Shown: one piece after another, positions 20,051 to 59,297 of the stretch
How the letters are laid out: every line of letters begins with the position of its first letter
How positions within the stretch are numbered: the first letter of the stretch is position 1
Assembly: GCA_033442325.1 (NCBI GenBank)
Contig: JAWQFM010000002.1
Coordinates: 980,700-1,044,699 of the forward strand
Origin: Salpingoeca rosetta
Lineage: Eukaryota > Protista > Choanoflagellata
Length of the DNA stretch: 64,000 bases
Direction: 5' to 3'
Made by a program: the position numbers and the translations under genes
The notes under the pieces: generated by a model
Seen by the model: only the letters and a program-made list of their open reading frames with translations
Told to the model about the DNA's origin: nothing
Database searches by the model: none

Positions 20051-20803
20051 TACACACACGCACACACGCACACACGCACATCTACAACGCACCACGACAA
20101 TGTCAAAGGGCCCGACGAGCTGTTTGCTCTTGGCAATGAGCTGCGTCACTTGGTCGAGGNNNNNNNNNNNNNNNNNNNNNNNNNNNNNNNNNNNNNNNNN
20201 NNNNNNNNNNNNNNNNNNNNNNNNNNNNNNNNNNNNNNNNNNNNNNNNNNNNNNNNNNNTTTCTTGTTTCCTCTTATTCATGTGACCTATGACGACGGTG
20301 GTTATCTGGTTATATAATGGCTTTTCCGCATGCTTTGACTGCTGATGGTGTGTGTTCTGATTGTTTTTTTGCTATTTTTTGCATCTGATCTGCGTCGACT
20401 GTGTGAGTTCCCTTCATATTCATTACATGTTACTTGATCTGCTCAGTTATCTAGTATTGGCGTATTTCGCTTCGATTTGCTATTCTTAGTTCTGTACGGT
20501 TACCTACATATGCGCCTTTCCCTCATCATCTGCCCTATTCTTCTTTGCCCAACCTCAGCATCGTCACTCGATGTCTTTAGTCTATGTTGCTTACTAGCAG
20601 TATAGGTGTGTCAATCCGTTTCTTTTTTGCTTCTTCTTATTTAGTGCGTTATTAACATTTGTGGTAGTTTAGGTTTGGTTTTTGTGCGACGTAGAGTGCT
20701 GATAAGAGGTAGAGTTCGGGAGAGAGGTAGAGGCAGACACACATACTCATAGAGACATATCCACAGCCACACACACACACACAGAGCAAACACACACACA
20801 CAG

Positions 20804-21098: not shown

Positions 21099-26326
<5,228 letters not shown>

Positions 26327-26333
26327 GAGCACT

Positions 26334-26390
<57 letters not shown>

Positions 26391-27061
26391 CATGTGTGCA
26401 TGTGTGTGTGTGTGTGCATGTGTGTGTGTGTTTGCGCGTTTGTATGTGAAATTGCACATGCATGTACGGGTGTGGTTCATTCTCACAAGTCTGCGTGTGC
26501 ATATGCCTTTCACCTCTGCCCCCCCCCACCACCCCTCAACTGAACCCCCCTCTTCGCCTTTGCCTCTGCTTGCTGTTTGTTTGGTCCCCTTTCTTTGTTG
26601 TTTCGTGACTGTGTACTAAGCGCGTCGACGCGAACGCAGCGTTGCTGTCGTTGTTGTTGAGTGTACAGAAAAATAAAGGGCGACAATGAAAATCAATTTC
26701 AACAGAAGCAAGCAACAAGGGTCTTATGGTTGTGAGTGTGGGGGAAAGTGTACAAAACAGGCATGGTATGCTTTCTATGCGCGACTGGCGATGCGCAGGC
26801 AACTAAACGGAAAAAGAGGGGAAGAGGAGGCAGGGGGGGGAAGGAAAGTAAAACTGAAATCATGGGATTCACGGAATCTGCGAAATGAAAGAAAGGAAAG
26901 AAAGCGATAGGCCGAGGAACCAAGGAAGGAAGAAAGGAAGGAAGGAGTAGGAAGGAGTAGGAAGGAAAGGAACCAACCAACTCATGCCAACCAACTCATG
27001 TCAACCAGCTTACGTCAACCAACTCATTGTCTTCCTCACATGCAGCGACGCGAAGATGCCA

Positions 27062-30000
27062 TCAAACAACAGACATCTCCGATTGCGTGTTCAGCTCGGC
27101 CAGCGTGACGTATGTGTGTTCTTCTTCGCACCGCTGCCGTTGTTTGGCTGGCGTTGTGGTGTCGCAGGTGGGCGATGTGGTGTTGTTGTTGAACATGCTG
27201 GTGTTGTTGTTGCCAAGTGCCTGCGGGGACGGCAAGGGAGTTGGGGAGCCGACACCGTCAAACACAAACGACTGCGCGGATCGCACCATACTGTCGCTCA
27301 GCTGTTGGTTCAGGGCCGGCGAAAGCGGAGATGGTGTGCTGCTGCCCCTGTTACGACGGAACGCCTCGTCGTTCTCACGCAGTGGAGACCCTTGTCGGCT
27401 CATGGGGGCAGACACCGTCACGCCCTCAAGCTCCCGCTGCTGCTCCTGCCGGTTGAACACCCGTCGCGCGTTGTCGTAGATGTGCGCGTTGGCGTGCGAG
27501 CCAATTGGCTGGAGATGCAGGGGCCGTGGTGGCGGCGGTGGTGGGACGTCGCCCCTGCGCTGCTCATAGAGGTGCTGCTGCGGCGACGTGGGTGACGATG
27601 GTGATGGCTGGCCGTGGTACACTTCAAAGTGGTGACGGATCATGCCCTCGCAGTCGCTCACACTCGACATGCGCGAGCGGCCATACACAGATGGGCTACG
27701 GCTCGGCAAGCGGCTTCCGTTGTTGCTCACTGCCGGCAGTGTCTCTGCCGCATACGTGGTGCAGTCGTCATCGTCGTCGTTGCCATCCCAGTTCAGGACC
27801 AGCCGTGAGCTGCTGGCCACAGATGGCAGCTGCTGCGGTGACAGCTGCTGCGATGACCCGCGGTGCTTGTCTCCGTGCACGCGCCAAGACTTGAAGCGCT
27901 CCCGTGCAATGGGGTCGTCCACAGATGCGCGCTCAAGGCCCACTGGCACACCCGTGCTGGAGGCGGCGTCGAAGCTGAGTCTGTCGCGGGAGCGGGAGGG
28001 GGGTCGGTCTGCGCTCGCATATGCGCCGCAGCCGACGGTGGCATCGGGGCGCGCAACGACCCCTGGCGGGGACTGCGTGGCCACAATGCCTGGTGGCGTG
28101 TTGTGCGGGCTGCCGGTGCAGTTGTGCAGCTCCTCGTAGATGTGCTCCTGTCCATGTCCGTGTCCCCCTTGTGACATCATGGCTGCCGTGGACGATGCAG
28201 AGGCGTAGCTGGACAGGGTGTAGCCCCGACGCCGGCGGCGACTGGGCCCATCTGAGCAGCGGAGGGACGACTTGCGCGGCGTGGGCGGGCTGGAGCTGCG
28301 GGTGAGATCCATGAGCGAGCCGCTGCGGCTGTGCGAGGAGAAGTGGTGGACGGTGCCCCGGAGAGACGCCGATCGGCGGTCGCCGCGGGAAAAGGAGGAA
28401 TGGCGCGGGAAGTGGGAGTGCGGCTGCGTGCCGTAGGGCTGGTGGACGTGGTGGTGATCTGGCAGGTTGACGATGCTGGAGCGGGCGGAAGAGCACACGG
28501 ACGAGCGAGCGCTGCCAAATGCAGAGTACTCCGAAGCGCACATGTTGACGCTTGCCTTTGGTGACCTGCGTGCGGCTGACGCACTTGGCGCGTCCATGTC
28601 GTTGATCGTCATCATCTCCGTGGACGCATATGGGGAAGCGATGCCGCTGGTGCACCTGCTTTGACGCGGCCCTTTGCTAGTCCTACCGCCCTGAACATCC
28701 ATCTGCTGCTCGCGCGCGAGAGGCGATGACGGTGACGTCTCTGCCTGCGGAGACGCGCTGCTGCTGGTGACGCGGCGGCGCTGCGGCGTTGGCGACGCAG
28801 GTACACTGATGCTGGTGGCAGCAGCTGTTGCTGTGCTGGCGGCGGCGGTGGTGGTGTTATCGTTGCAGCTCGTGGGCGTTGCTGGCTTGACAACGATGCA
28901 TGGGCTCTCCCGTGCGGAATTGCCGTTGGCGGAGGTGATGGCTCCCTCTTCTTCCTCTTCGCCGTGACGCACCTGCTCGTCGTCGTCGTCGTCATAGTCG
29001 TCATCGTCCACCACAGCATCAACAACGGTCAGATACTGCAGTTGGTGCTGCTGCTGCTGCTGCTGTTGCTGTTGGTGCATGTTCGCGGCTGCTGCTGCTG
29101 GCTGTTGCTGCTGTGGCGCTGGGCCGGCGGTGGAGGCTGTGCGCCAGAGGGTGGCGGTGTTGAGGAATTGGCTGCCGGCGCGGCTGCTTGCTCTGCTGCT
29201 GGTGGCAGGGCTCGCTGGGCGCACAAGCAAGGGCTGGTCGCACTCTGCCAACAGCTGCTCCAGCATCTGGATCTGGGACCAGTAGCGCAGAAGGTTTTGC
29301 AGGGTCTCGAGGAACTGGAAGCTGTCGCAGAGCTCAAAGACCCAGCGGGCGTGGTGCAGGGGTTTGAGCTGGTTGTCCAGGGTGAAGGTCAGCTGCCTGC
29401 CCGTGATGGCGACATCTTCCAGCTGGTCGATGGGGAAGAAGAGGCAGAAGTCCTCGTGTTCCACGTTGATGTTCGGGTATTGGATGCACAGCTCAATGTC
29501 ACCGAGGATGGTGCCCTCGCAAATCTCTGCAGCGCAGGCGCTCACAGCTGCAGCAGTTGTGGTGTTGGTTTGTTGGTTGGAGACAGGGAGAGGGAGGCAT
29601 TGGTGAGTGAAGGGTGGCCATACTTGTTTGGAGGCAGCGGGGGCATGGGCACCAGGATGTAGCACGGGTCAGGAGAGGTGGCAGATAAGCATACACGCAC
29701 GCACATGCACAGGCACAACATGCATGTGGGCACACAGACACACACACACACACACACACGCACACAAACACACACACACACACACACAGACACACACACA
29801 CACAGACACACACACACACAGACACACACACACGCGCACACACACACACACACACGCGCACACACACACACGTACGCACACACATAGACACACACACACA
29901 CACACATAGACACACACGAGCAAGTTGTGCTCACCGCCAATCTCTGCGATGGCGACCCATTGGCCCCACACCCACAACTGCTTCTTGGAGTTGTCAAATT

Positions 30001-31360
30001 CGGTGGTGCATGCACCCGACTCCGAAGGAAGGATGACACCTGCAATGTGAATAGAGCAAGAAAGCATGGGCGAATGTGAGCAAGCATTGGTGGGCGTGGG
30101 CGCACAGGTGGGTGGTTTTGGGTTTGTGGTGTTGGAGCAATCCTTGCCCACGTGTTTGGTGTGACACAAGAAATGCAGCACCTGCACACGATGACTCACG
30201 CACCGCAGGTGGCGAGGGCGCGGGCAAAGCGCAGGGCAAACGCCTCATCCATGTCCAGCTGTGCCAGAAGCTTGAGCAGCGTCTTGGACGAGAACGAGCT
30301 GTATGTGATGTATGTGTGAACATGTGTGTGTATGTGTGCGCATGTGTATGTTGGTGTGCATGTGGGTGTGCATGTGGGTGTGTAAGCTGAAGGTGAGTAT
30401 CAGAGCGTACATACAACAATGCACAAACTCAGCAGATTCCCGCACAAAGTCAGCGGTAATGACTTGCTAAGTCACTTGCAAGTCAAGGGAAGACTCTTAC
30501 GTTGCCTTGCCCTTTGCGTGTGCTTTGGGCTGGCTGTCGCGCATGAGGTACTTGAGGGTGATGATGATGGCGATGGTGTCTGTGCGCGCGCGGCGGCGCA
30601 GGTTGTGCTGGTTGGCATACTTGGAGGCCTTCTTCTTGTTGACGCGCAGGAACTGGTGCACCAGGCGAGAGGAGAGCCCGTGTGGGCGTGGGCTCTGGGT
30701 CCTGCTGCTGTTGCTGCTGCACTGCTGCGACGCATATGCGCTCTGCTGGTCCACGGGGGAGCTCCGCGAGTGCGCTTGGCGGTGCATCAGCCTGGCGAAA
30801 GAGCCTTGCGGCGCAAGCCTGGACTTGCCACTCATGGTGGAGGTGGAGATGGAGGCTGTCTCGAGGGAGGTGGCGCGTCGTGTGCTGCTGACCTCTTGTG
30901 GGGTGGTGCTGGTAGTTGCTCAGCTGCCTTCCTTCCGCGTTGCCCAGGAAGAGCTAAGCACAAGGATGGCGTGGTGTTGAGATGTGCTGCCCGTGGGAGA
31001 TGTTGGAGAAGAAGAACCTGCACGGCAACGTGACGGGTGGATGTGGTCTGTGCGTGAATATGCTGCCCACAGCAAGCTCGCTCGTGTGTTTTTGTTGTGA
31101 TCTGCTGGGTCTGTCCAAGCGAGGTATGACAATACGCTGCTGAGAACAAGGTCACGGGAGCATGTGCTGGTATGTGCGCGTGCTGGATGGTTGGATGGGG
31201 AAACTGCAAAGACGCAAGGCCAGTGGTATGTGTATGCGTGGATGATATCTGTACCTGTGAAGGGCACTGAGCGGCGGTGCAGTGAGCTGGGGGGTGGCGG
31301 CAGTGGTTGTGTTGGTTGCGGCGAAGGAATAAATGGCATGCTTGGCTTCGTGCTCATCAT
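27062..31360 (-). CDS. Uncharacterised signalling protein: DEP-like domain + PH/PTB-like domain + long disordered Tyr-motif tail
   Basis: Phase-consistent exons 31360-31255, 31017-30501 (in-frame TGA at 30922-30920; alternative ATG 30835), 30298-30204, 30039-29935, 29526-27062. The spliced segment SFSSKTLLKLLAQLDMDEAFALRFARALATCGVILPSESGACTTEFDNSKKQLWVW resembles the DEP pattern. Domain calls are by eye. Confidence 0.7.
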
Positions 31361-32455: not shown

Positions 32456-33019
32456 TGGTGGNNNNNNNNNNNNNNNNNNNNNNNNNNNNNNNNNNNNNNN
32501 NNNNNNNNNNNNNNNNNNNNNNNNNNNNNNNNNNNNNNNNNNNNNNNNNNNNNNNNNNNNNNNNNNNNNNNNNNNNNNNNNNNNNNNNNNNNNNNNNNNN
32601 NNNNNNNNNNNNNNNNNNNNNNNNNNNNNNNNNNNNNNNNNNNNNNNNNNNNNNNNNNNNNNNNNNNNNNNNNNNNNNNNNNNNNNNNNNNNNNNNNNNN
32701 NNNNNNNNNNNNNNNNNNNNNNNNNNNNNNNNNNNNNNNNNNNNNNNNNNNNNNNNNNNNNNNNNNNNNNNNNNNNNNNNNNNNNNNNNNNNNNNNNNNN
32801 NNNNNNNNNNNNNNNNNNNNNNNNNNNNNNNNNNNNNNNNNNNNNNNNNNNNNNNNNNNNNNNNNNNNNNNNNNNNNNNNNNNNNNNNNNNNNNNNNNNN
32901 NNNNNNNNNNNNNNNNNNNNNNNNNNNNNNNNNNNNNNNNNNNNNNNNNNNNNNNNNNNNNNNNNNNNNNNNNNNNNNNNNNNNNNNNNNNNNNNNNNNN
33001 NNNNNNNNNNNNNNNNNCG

Positions 33020-51774: not shown

Positions 51775-54084
51775 ATCCTTGCCCTTTTTTCATCGTCTTG
51801 CCCTTGTGCTTGCCCTGGTTTGCGTGTTGTTGTGCAACACGACCGTGTACGCACCATGCTTCCCGCCACTCACCATCACGCACATGTGGCCACAGATTGA
51901 CGAGAGCCTGCCTGTTGGCGCGATTGTGCACAACGTGTGCCAACGCATCGGCATCCACAACCACGAGGAGTACTCGTTCATGCTGGACGAAAAGGCCGCT
52001 TCTCCACAGGACACCCGCCGCTCAAAGAAGGAAACCCTCGTCGACCTTCGCAAGCGCATGGCTGTACGTCTTTGTGCGTGCCTGTGTGTGTGTGTGTTTG
52101 AGTGTGTACGCGTGTGTGTGTGTGTGTCTTGTGTGTTTGTGTGTTTGTGTGTCTGTGTTGTGTGTGCGTGTGTGCGTGTGTGTACGTGTGTCTGTGTGCG
52201 CTTCATGATGTTGCTGCCATAAGGGCTGTGCGCTGCCCTGTTTCTTCTGTTCACCTGCCCGCCTTTGCGGACCGTCCCGGTGCACGCCAGTGCCTCACAT
52301 GTGCTTCCCTTGCTGCACACCACCACGCAACAAACACACACACACACACACACACGCAACACACACATACACATGAACGAATCTCACGCGCGGGTGTATC
52401 TACAGGACGATGAGAAGTGGCTGCAGCACGAGCTGACGCTGCGAGCGCAGGGCGTGATGCCGGACCAGGTCCTCGTCCTCCGTAAGAAGTTTTTCTTCTC
52501 CGATCAGGAAATCAACAGAGACGATCCTGTGCAAGTCAACCTCGTCTACGGACAGGTGTGTGTATGTGTGTGTGTTTGTGTGTATTTGTGTGTGTGTGTG
52601 TGTGTTCGTGTGTTCGTGTGTTCGTGTGTGTGTGTGTGTTTGTGTGTGTTGCAGTCGCTGTGGGTCGTCTCCTTGCTACTGTGCTTGTGCTTGTGCTTGT
52701 GCTGTGCTGTGAACTCTTTCGGTACTGTTAACACTGACGCTACCCATGCTGTTTTATTGTGCACTTCACAACCGTTCAGGCCAAGGACTCGATTGTCAAG
52801 GGCGAGCATCCCTGCACCCTCGACGAAGCCGTACAGGTCAGTCCCCCCCCCCGGGCACGTGTGAGGTTTGCATGTGTGTGTGTGCATGTGTGTGTGTGTG
52901 TATGTCTGTCTGTCTCTATCCGTCTGTCTGCTCCCATCTGTGTGCGAGTGCTGCACTCCGTCACCGACCGTGCTTGTGCCACTTAGTTCTGTATTCTTGC
53001 TCTGCTTTCACGCACGTTTACATTGACACCACTCCACTCCCTTGCTCTTCCTCCCTCTTCCCTTCTTCCCACTCAGTTTGCTGCCATGCAAGTGCACATT
53101 GAGCATGGTGACCACAACCCTGACCGCCACAAACCGGGCTACCTCGACGACCTGCGAGCCGTGCTCCCTGCGGAGTATGTCAAGGTCAAGGGCGTGGAGA
53201 AGAAAATCTACGCAGAGCACAAGAAGCTCGTTGGCCAGCCCGAGCTGAACATCAAGTTCAAATACACCACCATGTGCCGCGCCCTCAAGACATATGGCAT
53301 CACCTTCTTCAGCGTGCGGGAGAAAGTGAAGGGCAAGAACAAGCTCATCCCACGCCTTCTCGGCGTCACTCGCGAGAGCGTCATGCGCATGGACGAAAAG
53401 ACAAAGGAGGTGCGGCTGTGTGCTCGTGTGTATATGCGTTGTTTTGTGCGGTTGTATCTTTGCTTGTTCTTGTTCTTGTGTGTGTGTGTGTGTGTGCGTG
53501 TACGTGTGTGCATGTGTGTACGTGTGTGCATGTGTGTACGTGTTTTGTGCCTTTGTGTTCTTGTCCATGTGTTTGTATGTGTTGTTTTGTGCGGTTGTTT
53601 GTGTTCTTGTGTGTGTGTGTGTGTGTGGTTGTTTGTTGCGTGTTGCGCACTTTTAGGCGGTTGTGAATGTGTTCCAAGTTCACTGCTCGTCATATTCATT
53701 GGCACCATCACACCACCGCCGTCACCACGACCGCCACCCTCCCCTCCCCCAGGTGCTGAAGACATGGCCGCTGACGACGGTGAAGCGGTGGGTTGCATCA
53801 CCCAACAGCTTCACCCTCGACTTTGGCACGTACTCCGACTACTACTCTGTGCAGACGCTTGAGGGCGACAAGATCTCGCAGCTCATTGCGGGCTACATCG
53901 ACATCATCCTCAAGAAGCGCCGGCAACAGGACAGGCGGGAGTCTGCGTCCAGCATGGCAGCACAATCTGGAAACACAACCTCACAACTCGCCCGCGCCGA
54001 ACGCGTCAACCTCCGCGGCAGCAAGGCGACGCAGGTGGGCGTTCGTGTTTGCGTGCGTCTCTGTGCTTGCGCGCGTCTCTCTCT

Positions 54085-54132
<48 letters not shown>

Positions 54133-57100
54133 ATGGGTATGTGTGTATGCGTATGTGTGTATGCGTATGTGTGTATGCGTACGTGTGTGTGTGTCATGTT
54201 TGTCTGCCTCTGTGTTCAAACGCATGTGCAAGTGCGGTTTGCGTGCGAGTTCACGCGAGTTCGACTTGCAAATGACCACCACCCCCTCACCCATCATGCA
54301 CACACGCAAACACACCTGTCCCCTCTTCCACAGATGAACGTGCGTCAGTCCGCCTCGGGCCACGCTTCGGTTCGTTCCACCATGCCGTCGTCCTCTGTTC
54401 TCGTCCTTGTGCTTCTTTTCTTCTTTCTTCTTCTTCTTCTTATGCTCCACTTGCACAGCTTACCCACATGTCCACTTCGCTGCATGACTGTCCCACCGAC
54501 ACAAAACGCCGCAACACCGCCGCAACACCACCACAACACAACACAACACGCGATACAACACTCTCCCCCTCTCACACGCTTACACACACTGCCACGCTCA
54601 CACAACACACACACACACAACACACAACACACACGCATACTACCTGCCGAAACAGCTGCGTCCGCGCCTGCGCTCGTCGGCACAGGCACAGTCCACGCTT
54701 GCCAACCACATCTCGCGTGCCAACCGCGTGTTTGTGCTTGCAGGCAAGAAGATTGCGTCGCCCGCCACGCTGCCGCCGCTTGGCGAGTCCGCGTCCGCCC
54801 ACCGCTGGCGCGAGGAAAAGGACCTGCTCGCCCGGCAGAACGTCGCAGCCGAGGTTGCCGCCATCCTCTCTGCCACCGCCAACATTGTCACGCTCACAAC
54901 AGCCCGCAGCGACAACACCAAGGTCAACTTCACCGCCGTCGGCGCCAGCATCTCCACACTGGCGTCCAACATGCGGTCTGCCGCCGAGGACGTGGCCATG
55001 CTCATGGCCCTCAACCCGGTGCAGGCAGACAACTTCAAGTCGGCGCTGGAGCAGCTGTCATCGCACCTGCGCTCGTTTGTGGACACGGTGGCCCCGACAG
55101 AGCGCGGCATCATGAACCGCCAGAACATCCTCTCCTCTGCAAACCAGGTTGGCCAAAGCGGGTCGGCGCTGCTGTCCCTGGCCCAGGCGGCCGAGGTCTC
55201 CGACGAGAAGCAGAGCCACATCATGGGCCTCACCAAGGCCATTGCAAACGCCACCAGCGTGCTTGTGGACCGCGCAAAGACGGTGGCCGGCAAGTGCGAC
55301 GACGCCGTGCTGCAGAGCAGCGTCATCACCGCCGCCAAGACCACCGCTGTCGCCACAACGCAGCTGGGCACCTGCTCCAAGATGCTGGTGCCATCCATCC
55401 ACAGCGCGCTGTGCCAGGAGCAGCTGCAGGAGAGCGCCCGCGCCCTGGCCGCCTCTGTGGAGACGCTCGTCAGCGCGGCTCAGAACGCGTGTGCGGACGA
55501 GCAGGCCGTTGGCGAGCTCGCCCACGCCGCCACCGCCGTGTCCGACGCCCTCGGGCAGCTCATCCAGGGCATCAACGAAGTTGTTGTTGTCGTCGGCAAC
55601 ACCGCGTCGACCGGCGGCTCGCGCAGTCGTGCGGGCACGGCGTCCGGTGCCGCAACGGGCACGTACGCGACCCTGGGCGCAAGCGTGTCGCCCATGTTTG
55701 AGCGCGCGTGCGAGGAGATTCTGCAGTCTGCAGACGCCCTCCCGCGCCGGCTTGGCGACCCGCGGCAGATGGTGGCGACCGCAAAGCAGCTGGCCAAGGC
55801 CACGGCCGTGGTGGTGAGCGAGGTGAAGGCACGCGCCAACAGGGAGACAGACCCGACGAAGCAGCAAGAGCACCTCAAGACGGCCCGCCGCCTTGCCGAC
55901 GCCACAACGCGCCTGGTGGAGGCCACGAAGAAGGCGTCGCAGAACCCCAAGAGCAAGAAGGCGCAGCAGGCACTTCTGGACGCAGCGTCGAACCTGCGCG
56001 ACGTGACGAAAGCCACAGCCAGCGACGTCATTCTCAAGCGCGCCATCACGGGGCTGGTCACCAGCGCCAAGCAGTCTGCCGCCTCCGTCACCCAGCTCAT
56101 CAGCGCCGTGCACGCCACGGACGACCTCGTGCGGGAGTCGTCAACACGCGAGCGGCTGGCGGCGCAGTGCCAGCACATCCGCGGGCAGACGGCGCGCCTG
56201 ATCACGGCCATTCGCGGTGCCCGCCGCGACCCCATGAACGCTGCGGCGCAGATGGACCTGGTCAACAAGGCGCAGGACTTCCTGGCGCCGGCCAAGCGCC
56301 TTGCGGAGGCCGCCAGAAACGTCGCGCCCACGTTCACGGACGCCGCAGCCACCATGCAGGTGACAAACTGCGCACGCAGCGTCAACGCGGCCCTGGCAGA
56401 CCTCAAGTCGTCCATTGCGTCCACGGCCGACGCCTCGGACAGCCTTCAGTTGAGCCACGCCGTGGAGAGCGTACTCACGCTCGGCTCCTCGCTGGCCCAG
56501 CTGGACGCGATGGCGGAGCAAGGGCAGTTGGCGGCGATGCCTGGGGACGACCCTGCCGAGGCGGTGCGGCGCATCATGGCGTCCATCCACGCCGTCAAGA
56601 CCCGCATCAAGCAGTTCCAGGCCGCGGTGAAGCAGGGCAACGAGGACTTTGTCAACAAGTGCGCCAACGCCATGGCCAAGGCCCTCAAGGAGCTCACCGT
56701 GGCGGTGCAGGTGTTTGCAGCGAGCACACCGGCCTCTGAGCAGCAGCGCGCCATCCTCGCCCACGCCCGCGCGGTCATGCAGCAGGCGGCCCAGCTGCTG
56801 ATGGAAGGCCGCAAGCTCGTGAGCGGCGCAGAGGCCGGCAGTGGCGGCAAGATGTCGGCTGCGGCCATGGCGGAGGTGAAGGCTGCGAGCAAGCAGCTGT
56901 TGGAGAGCCTGTCGCAGCTGGCCTCGGACCTCCCGGGCCAGCGCAGTGCGCAGCAGTGCGCGCAGCAGGTGCACAAGCAGGCCAAGCCGCTGACACAGAG
57001 CAAGGGCTTCAGCGTGCAGGCGCAAGGCCCCGAAGTGTTCCAGCAGCACTCGGCCACCGTGATGTCCGCGGCCAATGCCTTGTCGCAGGTGGTGTCGGAG

Positions 57101-59297
57101 GTGTCTGACAAGGCCCTGCTGGGCGGGCCCGACGAGGTTGCCGCGGCATCGCAGCGCCTGGTGGAAGTGCACAAGTCGTTTGTGTCTGCGGGGCTCACCC
57201 TTGCCGGCGCGTGCGAGACGCAGGAGGACGCAAAGGACCTGCTGTCATTCCTGCAGAGCATCTCCACCAATGCGGAGAAGCTGCTGAAGCTTGGTGCTGC
57301 CACGGCCGTGGACCCGACAGACAACAGCCAGCGCAACCTCCTCTCCTCCGCCGTGCGTGGCATCTCTTCATCCATCAACAATCTTCTCACCGCGTGCACG
57401 CAGTCCGCCCCGGGCCAGAAGCAGTGTGACAAGGCCATTCGTACAGTGCAGGCCGCAGCGGCCTCGCTCGAGAGCCCAACATCCGCCATCAGCGCAAGCT
57501 CCTACTTTACCTGTGTTGACGACGTGCTGACCAAAACCAGAGTGCGTCAGTGCATGTTTGTTTGTTTGTATGCTTGTTTGTTTGTTTGTATGCTTGTTTG
57601 TTTGTATGCTTGTTTGTTTGGTTGGTTGGTTGGTTGTATGCTTGTTTGTTTGTTTGTATGCTTGTTTGGTTGGTTGTATGCTTGTTTGGTTGTATGCTTG
57701 TTTGTACGTGTTCTTCAGCTCGCTTCCCCTGCACGTGCCTTCTTTGCACACATTCGCGCACACACGCATGCATACTTACTCACACACAACACGCACACAC
57801 TCACTCACACACTCACACACTCACACACTCGTTCTTGTCTTCTCTGTGCAGGACCTGGGCTCTGCACTGGCTGAGGTTGCGGGCCACTGCAAGAACCGTG
57901 ACACAGACCGCTTCAACTCTGCACTGCAGCACGCCACAGATGCCGTCGTCGGTCTCTGCGAGGACGCTGCACAGGCAGCATACCTGGTTGCCGTGTCTGA
58001 TGTGTCCTCCTCTGGTGGCTCTGGCGGTGGGGCGCTGGACCAGGCGGGCGTGATTCGTTCCAAGGAAGCAATCGAGCACGCGTGCGCAACGCTGGTGAGC
58101 TGCACGTCGTCCCAGCAGGAGGTGATGGCGGCGGCAAAGCGCATCGCCACAGATACAACGAGCCTGTGCCACCTGTGCCGTGCGGCGGCGGAGCAGACAA
58201 CCAACCCAGTTGTCTCGCAGCAGCTGGTCGAGGTGTCCACGGCCATCTCCGGCGCCACACGCGACGTGATTGCCAACGCAAAGCAGCTGGCCTCGTCCAT
58301 GACCCCCGAGGCGCGCGCTGCGTGCCAAGAGAGCTCGGCACAGCTGAACGAGGTGGTGGATCAGCTGCTTCAGCTGGCCACCGACGCGGACGCGGATGCG
58401 AGCGGTGCCGGTGCCGCCGCCTTCAGCGAAGAGGCGAAAGCGCGCCAGAAGCCGTTCTGCACCGCTGGGCGGGACGTGGCAGAGGCAAGCTGCAAGCTCA
58501 TCACCGCCGCCAAGAGCCTGATTGCCAACCCACGCGACCCGCCAAAGTGGGAGGAGCTGGGCCAGCACTCCAAGACAGTGTCGCAGTCTGTGCAGGCGCT
58601 CGTGTCCGCCATGCAGGACAACGCGCCCGGCCAGCGCGAGTGCGACAACACCGCCTACGAGATTGGGCAGCTGCTGCACGACCTGCAGGAGACGGAGTAC
58701 GCGTGCCAGAGCGGCACGCTGGAGGTGGCTGACGACGAGACGATGGGCGGTTTCCAGGAGGAGATTGTGGGCATGGCTGCGAACCTGCGCGAGGCGTGCG
58801 ACGCGCTCAAGACGGGCGGAACGAGCGACCCGGCGCGTCTGGCGCACGCAGCGGAGGCAACGCGCACCATCGCAGACTCGTTGCTCACGAGCATGATTGG
58901 CGCCATCTCGCACATCAAGGACAGCGAGGTGCAGCAGTCCGTGTGCGCGCAGGGCCGGACGTTGCTGGAGGGCGTGAGCCAGCTCGTGCACGCGGCACGC
59001 GACTGTGGCGGCAACCCGGATGAGAAGACGAAGCACCGCATTGTCGCACGCGCGCGTGAGAACCTGGACAAGGGCATCACAGAGTTCTGTAACACGATTG
59101 GGCAGCTCACCAACGAGACTGGCGTTGCTGCTGGCAACCTGAACAACATCAACCGCGCCCTGGACAAGCTGGAGCTCGGAGAAGCGGCCGAGTTCACCAC
59201 TGCGCAGAACTTTGTCGACTACCAGGACTCTGCCAACAAGCACACCCGCAAGATGGCCACAAAGGCACAGGTGTGTGTGTGTGTGTATGTGTGTGCT

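What the first reader, a model, noticed from the sequence alone, without database searches (positions are those of the whole stretch)
27062..30835. Novel DEP + PH/PTB-like docking protein with multiple pTyr-type motifs and a PDZ-binding end
Seen after splicing: basic helix, DEP-like segment, a beta-rich ~100 aa domain ending in an amphipathic helix (..ARWVFELCDSFQFLETLQNLL), then a ~750 aa disordered tail. The tail carries HIYEEL, HLYEQ, HIYDNA, HTYVTL and SPYAST, an SH3-ligand-like VPPPPPPRP, and C-terminal EMSVV (class I PDZ motif). Known: IRS/Dok/Gab/FRS2 adaptors use a membrane-targeting domain plus a Tyr-rich tail. Inference: an independently assembled RTK/GPCR docking scaffold. The DEP portion is invisible in the ORF track because it is split across three exons.
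Basis: partly seen in the sequence, partly recalled or inferred. Interest (0 to 1): 0.7.

Follow-up and report, generated by a model that had tools for sequence, protein, structure and literature searches.

The report
Orphan choanoflagellate scaffold with conserved tyrosine motifs
This is a real, expressed four-exon gene of the choanoflagellate Salpingoeca rosetta (PTSG_01200) that encodes a small folded head and a roughly 700-residue floppy tail carrying a few conserved tyrosine and proline motifs. It looks like a lineage-specific signalling adaptor, but neither the proposed DEP domain nor tyrosine phosphorylation could be shown.

Summary
The window is Salpingoeca rosetta DNA. The four minus-strand exons (30835-30501, 30298-30204, 30039-29935, 29547-27062) join in frame through GT..AG introns to give exactly NCBI's hypothetical protein PTSG_01200 (1006 aa).

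The join is supported three ways. Intron positions and phases are the same in Barroeca monosierra and in a Tara Oceans contig. A Salpingoeca infusionum transcript ORF carries both head segments contiguously. Published RNA-seq shows 20 FPKM in the swimmer sample against 1-5 elsewhere.

- **Sequence families:** Pfam, PDB sequence search and an exhaustive HMMER scan find no known family, only four or five choanoflagellate relatives.
- **Structure:** two AlphaFold models are poor (pLDDT 42-44). In both, the beta domain draws almost only PH/PTB/FERM-F3 folds, weakly (Z 5-5.9).
- **DEP:** not demonstrated (profile-profile P 0.015-0.08, probability 3% or less).
- **Tail:** only 7.5% is identical across three species, yet HIYEEL, PPPPPPRP and YV[TSD]L are conserved.
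- **PDZ end:** the class I ending is not conserved.

A pTyr/SH3 docking role is plausible but untested. The scan had already noted this same stretch once (s1-432726), not other DNA.

The parts
30501..30835 (-). Exon 1. It runs from the ATG at 30835 and encodes residues 1-111 plus 2 nt. It holds a non-conserved Ser/Gln-rich start, a basic helix (about residues 56-83, window 30587-30670) and the first helix of the 'DEP-like' segment (residues 84-100).
   Evidence: First ATG after an in-frame stop; donor GT at 30500-30499. Conserved in B. monosierra (P0005/P0006, L026).
30204..30298 (-). Exon 2 (95 nt, residues 112-144). It encodes the second and third predicted helices (SFSSKTLLKLL ... ALRFARALATCG).
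   Evidence: AG acceptor at 30300-30299 and GT donor at 30203-30202. Same exon, phase and sequence pattern in L026 and L024/L025.
29935..30039 (-). Exon 3 (105 nt, residues 144-179). It holds a conserved F-x-x-SK-x-Q-x-W-x-W-x-x-W motif, which could be a hairpin closing the helical segment or the first strands of the beta domain.
   Evidence: AG at 30041-30040 and GT at 29934-29933. Conserved in three other species.
27062..29547 (-). Exon 4 (2486 nt with stop, residues 179-1006). It encodes the beta domain and the whole tail.
   Evidence: Part of the 867-aa ORF. The acceptor after ...ctgcag at 29550-29548 is used in the NCBI model, and the same AV-x-AC-x-A start is conserved in L001 and L024.
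29237..29524 (-). Beta-rich domain with a C-terminal amphipathic helix (residues 187-282). It is probably a PH-superfold (PH/PTB/F3-like) domain.
   Evidence: Five strands plus a helix, pLDDT 65-73 in the core. Fold matches are almost only PH-like at Z 5.0-5.9 for two models. hhalign against S. rosetta F3/IRS pieces gives P 0.045. This is the most conserved part of the protein: 52-64% identity with the near relatives and 25% with S. infusionum.
27065..29215 (-). Disordered tail, residues 290-1006.
   Evidence: No Pfam family. 75% disorder-promoting residues, and 7.5% of positions identical in three species.
28205..28240 (-). Polybasic motif RRRRRGYTLSSY (residues 615-626).
   Evidence: RRRGYT(V/L) is conserved in P0002/P0006 and P0003.
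28127..28144 (-). HIYEEL (residues 647-652, Tyr649).
   Evidence: Identical in S. rosetta, B. monosierra and the Tara contig. It is one of only two strictly conserved islands of the tail.
27881..27919 (-). DDPIARERFKSWR (residues 722-734), a conserved motif without tyrosine.
   Evidence: The pattern D-[PL]-IA-x-x-R-x-x-SWR is present in three species.
27521..27547 (-). VPPPPPPRP (residues 846-854). It fits P-x-x-P-x-R, a class II SH3 ligand pattern.
   Evidence: Second strictly conserved island.
27464..27484 (-). HIYDNAR (residues 867-873, Tyr869). It is of the Y-x-N type.
   Evidence: LYDNAR in the Tara orthologue; degenerate in B. monosierra.
27101..27118 (-). HTYVTL (residues 989-994, Tyr991), 15 residues from the C-terminus.
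   Evidence: YV[TSD]L lies near the C-terminus in all four orthologues, including the distant S. infusionum (EHTYVDL).
27065..27079 (-). C-terminal EMSVV.
   Evidence: Present here. The orthologues end in YIV, SCV and LFA, so only a hydrophobic end is shared.

Best explanation
PTSG_01200 is a genuine, single-copy, expressed gene of Salpingoeca rosetta. It belongs to a small family seen so far only in craspedid choanoflagellates.

The protein is soluble. Its N-terminal folded module of about 200 residues consists of three predicted helices followed by a beta domain capped by a long helix, most likely of the PH/PTB/FERM-F3 superfold. After that comes an intrinsically disordered tail of about 700 residues, whose only conserved parts are short linear motifs:
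- a polybasic RRRRGYT
- HIYEEL
- D-P-IA-x-ER-x-x-SWR
- PPPPPPRP
- (I/L)YDNAR
- a near-C-terminal H-x-YV-x-L

It most likely works as an adaptor. The head would place the protein by binding a membrane lipid or a peptide. The proline motif would hold SH3 proteins. The tyrosine motifs, once phosphorylated by one of the many choanoflagellate tyrosine kinases, would recruit SH2 proteins: YEEL is Src-type, YxN is Grb2-type and YVxL is Shp2-type.

Shown here: the gene structure, expression, restricted distribution, disorder and motif conservation. Inferred: the fold, phosphorylation, the partners and any receptor link.
For: - **Gene model and identity:**
- **Conserved exon structure in B. monosierra and a Tara contig:**
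- **Contiguous transcript ORF in S. infusionum:**
- **Expression:** sense FPKM of 1.35, 3.72 and 4.76 (attached), 20.4 (SwB), 2.4, 2.0 and 4.6 (colonies) and 2.1 (chains), with antisense near zero (PMC4054682 supplements). The gene set was refined with RNA-seq.
- **Copy number:** no paralogue in the genome.
- **Relatives:** only 5 proteins among 1.84 billion representatives match.
- **Fold:** PH-like fold matches fill the lists for two models. The language-model lead points to syntrophin PH and IRS-type PTB.
- **Motif conservation against a 7.5% background:**
- **His at -2 of the tyrosine:** 4 of the 15 tail tyrosines have it, exactly the flagged ones. The binomial P is 0.002, computed post hoc.
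- **Readers are available:** at least 60 SH2 exon matches in this genome.
- **Literature:** Grb2 and Shp2 homologues are present in choanoflagellates, while Gab, Frs2 and Dof are absent (PMC7260276, PMC2747914).
Against: - No phosphorylation evidence. The gene is absent from the held supplements of the one S. rosetta phosphoproteome paper.
- The models are poor (mean pLDDT 44 and 42).
- All fold scores lie under the level at which chance arrangements are common (Z under 8). Foldseek finds nothing at E 0.001 or better, and puts Sac7d-like small barrels beside the PH-like folds.
- YEEL and YVTL also fit the phosphorylation-independent Y-x-x-hydrophobic sorting pattern.
- The polybasic runs could equally be nuclear localisation signals.
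- The family is missing from Monosiga brevicollis and animals at the sensitivity used.
- Matches of a tyrosine motif to an SH2 class come from general knowledge of animal SH2 domains, not from a test.
Confidence: 0.45

Rival explanations
1. The protein is a lineage-specific scaffold made of short linear motifs, but it does not work through phosphotyrosine. The Tyr motifs would act as Y-x-x-hydrophobic or purely structural contacts. Regulation would come through Ser/Thr phosphorylation, since RRRRGYT fits a basophilic kinase site and Ser is 16% of the tail. The basic stretches would direct it to the nucleus, the cytoskeleton or acidic membranes.
For: The tail holds 112 Ser and 61 Arg among 717 residues. 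Conserved motifs without tyrosine exist, namely DPIA-x-ER-x-x-SWR and PPPPPPRP. No phosphotyrosine data were found. Only 2 of the 15 tail tyrosines are identical in all three species of the alignment.
Against: The two best conserved tyrosines sit in motifs with textbook SH2-ligand form. Four share His at -2, as one kinase or reader specificity would give. There is no transmembrane segment that would give a sorting signal its usual context.
Confidence: 0.3
2. The head is a very divergent member of a known animal-type module, and homology is hidden by divergence. Candidates are a pleckstrin-like DEP-then-PH arrangement, an IRS/Dok/FRS2-type PTB, or the F2-F3 remnant of a FERM domain. The protein would then be a derived relative of a known adaptor rather than an independent invention.
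For: - hhalign aligns the helical segment to S. rosetta DEP domains in the canonical register (the C-F-x-G helix and the A-x-x-x-G-x-x-L-L-x-x-G-x-I helix), with P 0.015-0.08 against 0.3-0.5 for cross controls.
- The beta domain against F3/IRS pieces gives P 0.045.
- Many top fold matches are FERM F3 lobes and IRS-1/Dok PTB domains.
Against: - No Pfam DEP, PH, PID, IRS or FERM match at E up to 10.
- The gene is not hit in six-frame scans of the genome with DEP or IRS models.
- hhalign probabilities are 3% or less.
- The helical part is modelled at pLDDT under 50, and no DEP structure appears among the fold matches.
- The language-model search of the helical part gives nothing.
Confidence: 0.15
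3. The gene model is an annotation artefact: exons 1-3 do not belong to the large ORF, or the locus is not protein-coding.
For: I could not lay reads on the junctions.
Against: All splice sites are canonical and phase-compatible. Exon sequences, positions and phases are conserved while the introns are not. A complete transcript ORF in S. infusionum spans both segments. Sense-strand RNA-seq signal is present. RNA-like runs hold 0.80-0.81 of the sampled words, equal to the exon plus UTR share of 0.81. That last point is suggestive only.
Confidence: 0.03

Closest known systems
Gab/DOS, IRS, Dok and FRS2 docking proteins of animals
   Same: The layout is the same: a small N-terminal targeting module of the PH superfold, then a long disordered tail with a proline-rich SH3 ligand and several tyrosine motifs. 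One of these is a YV-x-L-type motif close to the C-terminus, as with the Shp2 sites of Gab proteins. The resemblance is one of working principle only.
   Different: No detectable sequence homology: Pfam PH, IRS and PID models are not matched. A helical segment precedes the beta domain, in place of a lipid anchor or a canonical PH. The family is restricted to choanoflagellates. Phosphorylation and partners are unknown.
Pleckstrin (PH-DEP-PH) and other DEP proteins (Dishevelled, P-Rex, RGS7/9, Epac)
   Same: The proposed order is a DEP-like helical segment followed by a PH-like domain. A weak profile match lies in the canonical DEP register.
   Different: The DEP model is not matched, and the profile-profile probability is 3% or less. 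The hairpin arm between helix 1 and helix 2 would be much shortened. No DEP fold was recovered from the models.
FERM F3 / IRS-type PTB lobes (talin, SNX17/27, merlin, IDOL)
   Same: These give the best structural matches to the beta domain (Z 5.2-5.8). The weak hhalign match to S. rosetta F3 pieces covers strands 5-7.
   Different: There are no F1 or F2 lobes and no Pfam FERM or IRS match. Only five strands are modelled with any confidence.

Membership tests
DEP domain (Pfam PF00610) | Sequence match to the DEP profile at or above the gathering score | tested here: not met
   No match at E up to 10 for the exons, for P0001 or for P0001:50-290. The six-frame genome scan finds 14 DEP pieces elsewhere, none at this gene.
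DEP domain (Pfam PF00610) | Profile-profile similarity to bona fide DEP domains | tested here: inconclusive
   hhalign against 3 to 12 S. rosetta DEP pieces gives P 0.02, 0.08 and 0.015 and probability 0.7-3%. The register is the canonical one. Cross controls give P 0.3-0.5.
DEP domain (Pfam PF00610) | Three-helix bundle with a beta-hairpin arm and C-terminal strands (winged-helix-like fold) | tested here: inconclusive
   Three helices are predicted in both models, but at pLDDT under 50. No DEP structure is among the matches.
PH-like superfold (PH, PTB, FERM F3) | Seven-stranded beta sandwich closed by a C-terminal helix | tested here: inconclusive
Five strands and the helix are modelled (pLDDT 65-73, and 57-63 in the second model). 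Foldseek has no hit at E 0.001 or better. Atlas TM-scores are under 0.4.
IRS-type PTB (Pfam PF02174; IRS, Dok, FRS2) | Sequence match to the IRS profile | tested here: not met
   No Pfam hit. The genome scan at E up to 10 hits 13 places, none in this gene. hhalign gives P 0.045 only.
Phosphotyrosine docking proteins (functional class) | Several tyrosine motifs in a disordered tail, conserved among orthologues | tested here: met
   HIYEEL is identical in 3 of 3 near orthologues. YV[TSD]L is present in 4 of 4. (I/L)YDNAR is present in 2 of 3.
Phosphotyrosine docking proteins (functional class) | Tyrosines are phosphorylated and bind SH2/PTB proteins | not testable with these tools
   No entry in the held supplements of PMC11984502. 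Needs phosphoproteomics and binding assays.
Phosphotyrosine docking proteins (functional class) | N-terminal module brings the protein to a membrane or receptor | not testable with these tools
   The fold is only weakly assigned. There is no lipid anchor signal (the N-terminus is MSGK, and Gly is not at position 2) and no transmembrane segment.
Class I PDZ ligand | C-terminal [ST]-x-hydrophobic, conserved | tested here: inconclusive
   The endings are SVV (S. rosetta), SCV (Tara), YIV (B. monosierra) and LFA (S. infusionum).
Class II SH3 ligand | P-x-x-P-x-[KR], conserved | tested here: met
   [16 protein letters not shown] and PPTPPPRP are found in the three near orthologues, in one of the two strictly conserved islands. 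Binding itself was not tested.

The most novel reading that the evidence does not exclude
Choanoflagellates have very large tyrosine kinase and SH2 repertoires and keep Grb2, Shp2 and Src, yet lack Gab, IRS/Dok-type and Frs2/Dof docking proteins. On this reading they evolved their own docking protein from unrelated parts. PTSG_01200 would link their lineage-specific receptor kinases to the shared Src, Grb2 and Shp2 readers through the HIYEEL, YDN and YV-x-L motifs, mainly in swimmer cells. This would be a case of convergent assembly of the docking-protein principle outside animals.
Probability: 0.3. Interest if true: 0.65.

Novelty: new variant of a known kind. Interest (0 to 1): 0.4.

Why it matters
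How the elaborate phosphotyrosine machinery of choanoflagellates is wired is largely unknown, because most of their receptor kinases and adaptors have no animal counterparts. A conserved, lineage-specific protein built like a docking adaptor would be a concrete and genetically tractable entry point, since S. rosetta can be edited. It carries motifs that fit the three reader types shared with animals (Src, Grb2, Shp2). If the reading is wrong, this is simply one more orphan disordered protein.

Tried and rejected
- **Read laying.** There is no read-level junction evidence.
- **Joined models.** The joined protein was used only through the database record P0001, which is identical to the join. 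The B. monosierra and Tara exons were handled exon by exon, as separate rows.
- **Pfam, exon by exon and on the whole protein.** Nothing beyond chance.
- **PDB sequence searches with the protein and with the profile.** Chance-level rows only.
- **Word-based search with the full-length alignment A3.** It was swamped by low-complexity words and returned only P0003. The search from P0004 returned only itself.
- **Foldseek against PDB.** No row at E 0.001 or better.
- **ESM Atlas by shape.** TM-scores under 0.4.
- **Atlas by features.** Leads of 0.76-0.78 for the whole head and nothing for the helical part.
- **Second AlphaFold model on the S. infusionum head.** No better than the first.
- **Nearby IRS-type PTB hit in the window.** It turned out to be the F3 lobe of talin, not a Dok/FRS2-like gene.
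- **Literature.** No paper holds the locus tag or the accessions. The phosphoproteome supplements have no entry.
- **Complex prediction.** Not used, because no specific partner pair is claimed.
Full report
**What the window is.** A word-based protein search with the large exon returned NCBI's 'hypothetical protein PTSG_01200 [Salpingoeca rosetta]', 1006 aa, at 99-100% identity. Its accessions are EGD80611 / XP_004997172 / UniRef F2U137. The window is G000:C2:980700-1044699 of the 55-Mb assembly. Rfam finds no RNA family in the window.

**Gene structure.** On the minus strand the first ATG after an in-frame stop is at 30835. The exons are 30835-30501, 30298-30204, 30039-29935 and 29547-27062, stop included. 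All three introns are GT..AG, with phases 2, 1 and 1, and the frame is kept. The database protein P0001 is exactly this join. Intron 3 is mostly a (GT/CA)n run.

The joined protein was always given as the database record P0001.

I therefore have no junction reads, and I sent nothing from those places to search tools afterwards. The other evidence is good.
- The S. rosetta gene set was refined with RNA-seq from eight conditions (PMC4054682).
- PTSG_01200 has sense-strand FPKM of 1.35, 3.72 and 4.76 in attached samples, 20.4 in column SwB, 2.4, 2.0 and 4.6 in colony samples, and 2.1 in chains. Antisense counts are near zero. The table gives log2 fold 2.35 (P 2.8e-10) and 2.85 (P 1.2e-16) for swimmers against attached cells and against colonies. 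There is only one swimmer sample.
- The held file is captioned 'thecate', but its own column heads say Swim. I go by the columns.
- In genomic contigs of Barroeca monosierra (L026 and L001; species) and in a Tara Oceans marine metagenome (L024, L025), exons 2, 3 and 4 are found in the same order. They have GT..AG borders at the same codon positions and phases, while the introns are unrelated.
- A complete Trinity transcript ORF of Salpingoeca infusionum (P0004, 546 aa) carries the helical segment and the beta domain contiguously.
- RNA-like runs hold 0.80-0.81 of the sampled words of 27000-30900. That equals the exon plus UTR share of 0.81. This is suggestive only.

**Distribution.** HMMER read all 1.84 billion representatives with residues 55-290. 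It found five proteins: the query itself, B. monosierra (P0002, with fragment P0005; the full model P0006 has 795 aa), the Tara protein P0003, and S. infusionum P0004 at 25% identity. Nothing came from Monosiga brevicollis, other holozoans or animals at that sensitivity. There is no paralogue in the S. rosetta genome. No paper in the library names the gene.

**The head.**
- Pfam gives nothing at E up to 10, whether exon by exon, for the whole protein or for residues 50-290. PDB sequence searches give only chance rows.
- AlphaFold on a five-row alignment gave mean pLDDT 44. It shows a long basic helix (residues 76-100), two short helices (116-125 and 130-142), five strands (197-250) and a long helix (255-281). 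Only the strands and the last helix reach pLDDT 65-73. The S. infusionum head gave pLDDT 42 with the same pattern.
- VIA-align against 48,161 chains placed almost only PH-superfold domains on the beta domain. For the second they were Avo1 PH at 5.9, SNX27/17 F3, IRS-1 PTB, IDOL F3, GULP1, APPL1, ARH, Dok2 and Dab2.
- These Z values are below the level at which chance arrangements are common, and the two models share their alignment. I read this as a consistent lead, not a proof.
- Foldseek has no row at E 0.001 or better. It mixes Sac7d-like small barrels with PH, PTB and FERM rows.
- The Atlas shape search is empty. The language-model search names syntrophin PH (0.78) and IRS-type PTB (0.76), both under the tool's trust level.
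- hhalign of the beta domain against five S. rosetta F3/IRS pieces gives P 0.045 over strands 5-7.

**DEP.**
- The S. rosetta genome has 14 DEP exon matches, none at this gene.
- hhalign of the helical segment against those DEP domains gives P 0.02, 0.08 and 0.015, with probability 0.7-3%. The alignment is always in the expected register: the S-F-S-S helix on the C-F-x-G-S helix, and A-L-R-F-A-R-A-L-A-T-C-G-V-I on A-V-x-L-G-x-x-L-L-x-x-G-x-I. Cross controls give P 0.3-0.5.
- The feature search of this part alone gives nothing.
- DEP is therefore possible but not demonstrated. An alternative is that the conserved W-x-W-x-x-W stretch of exon 3 supplies the first strands of a full seven-stranded PH-like sandwich.

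**The tail.** Residues 290-1006 are 75% disorder-promoting residues, with 112 Ser, 63 Pro and 61 Arg. There is no transmembrane-like stretch. In a three-species alignment only 54 of 717 positions (7.5%) are identical. The only windows with 5 of 8 identical positions are GQEHIYEELHNC and GDVPPPPPPRPLHLQ.

By eye, the alignment also shows these conserved motifs:
- RRRGYT
- D-[PL]-IA-x-x-R-x-x-SWR
- (I/L)YDNAR
- H-x-YV[TS]L-x-E, about 15 residues from the end; the distant S. infusionum protein has EHTYVDL there

HLYEQ and SPYAST are not conserved. The binomial P is 0.002, computed post hoc. The C-terminus is SVV, YIV, SCV or LFA in the four species, so a class I PDZ ligand is not a conserved feature.

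**How it probably works.** The layout is that of a scaffold: a folded head, then a long disordered tail whose conservation is confined to short motifs. The genome offers readers, with at least 60 SH2 exon matches over the Pfam cut-off. Published surveys found Grb2 and Shp2 homologues in Salpingoeca and Monosiga, but no Frs2 or Dof (PMC7260276) and no bona fide Gab/DOS in Monosiga (PMC2747914).

From general knowledge of animal SH2 domains, not tested here, YEE[IL] fits Src-family SH2 domains, Y-x-N fits Grb2, and Y-[VI]-x-[LVI] fits Shp2. P-x-x-P-x-R is a class II SH3 ligand. I therefore favour a pTyr/SH3 adaptor at 0.45. A phosphotyrosine-independent motif scaffold follows at 0.3. A hidden relative of a known DEP, PTB or FERM family stands at 0.15. 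An annotation artefact stands at 0.03.

**Novelty.** The gene is annotated only as hypothetical, and the family has no name. If the adaptor reading holds, it is a new variant of the docking-protein kind, built without detectable homology to Gab, IRS, Dok or FRS2. If it does not, it is an ordinary orphan disordered protein. The scan had already noted this same stretch once (s1-432726). That is not independent support.

Noticed in passing
window 52300-57900 (+), e.g. 53308-53412 and 53747-53911: The two Pfam IRS-type PTB matches inside the window belong to the FERM F3 lobe of a talin gene. The long ORF 54728-57874 is talin rod. Most 'IRS' hits in the S. rosetta genome look like FERM F3 lobes of talin and MyTH4-FERM myosins rather than IRS, Dok or FRS2 adaptors.
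   Followed up: partly
window 29548-29934 (intron 3) and many other introns, e.g. 26300-26420 and 53400-53700: Introns are filled with long (GT/CA)n runs that reach close to the splice sites. The Tara relative (L024) has the same habit, while B. monosierra introns are AT-rich.
   Followed up: no
window 20160-20259, 25022-25121, 32462-33017: There are three runs of N (assembly gaps). The last lies just upstream of the neighbouring gene, which another reader noted as NEK-like.
   Followed up: no
PMC4054682, held supplementary file 12: The file captioned 'upregulated in thecate cells' has columns headed Swim/Attach, Swim/Colony and Swim/Other. The captions of files 12 and 13 may be swapped in the held copy. 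PTSG_01200 is highest in SwB.
   Followed up: partly
P0001 residues 647-649, 837-839, 867-869, 989-991 (window 28136-28144, 27566-27574, 27476-27484, 27110-27118): There is a recurrent H-x-Y signature (HIY, HLY, HIY, HTY). It is also seen in the orthologues (HIY and HLY in B. monosierra; HTY and HAY in S. infusionum). It may mark the preference of one kinase or reader.
   Followed up: partly
L026 and L001 (B. monosierra contigs of one run): The orthologue is split over two short contigs. Each ends in a homopolymer A/T run inside intron 3, so the gene caller made two partial proteins there (P0005 and P0002). The EukProt model P0006 joins them.
   Followed up: yes
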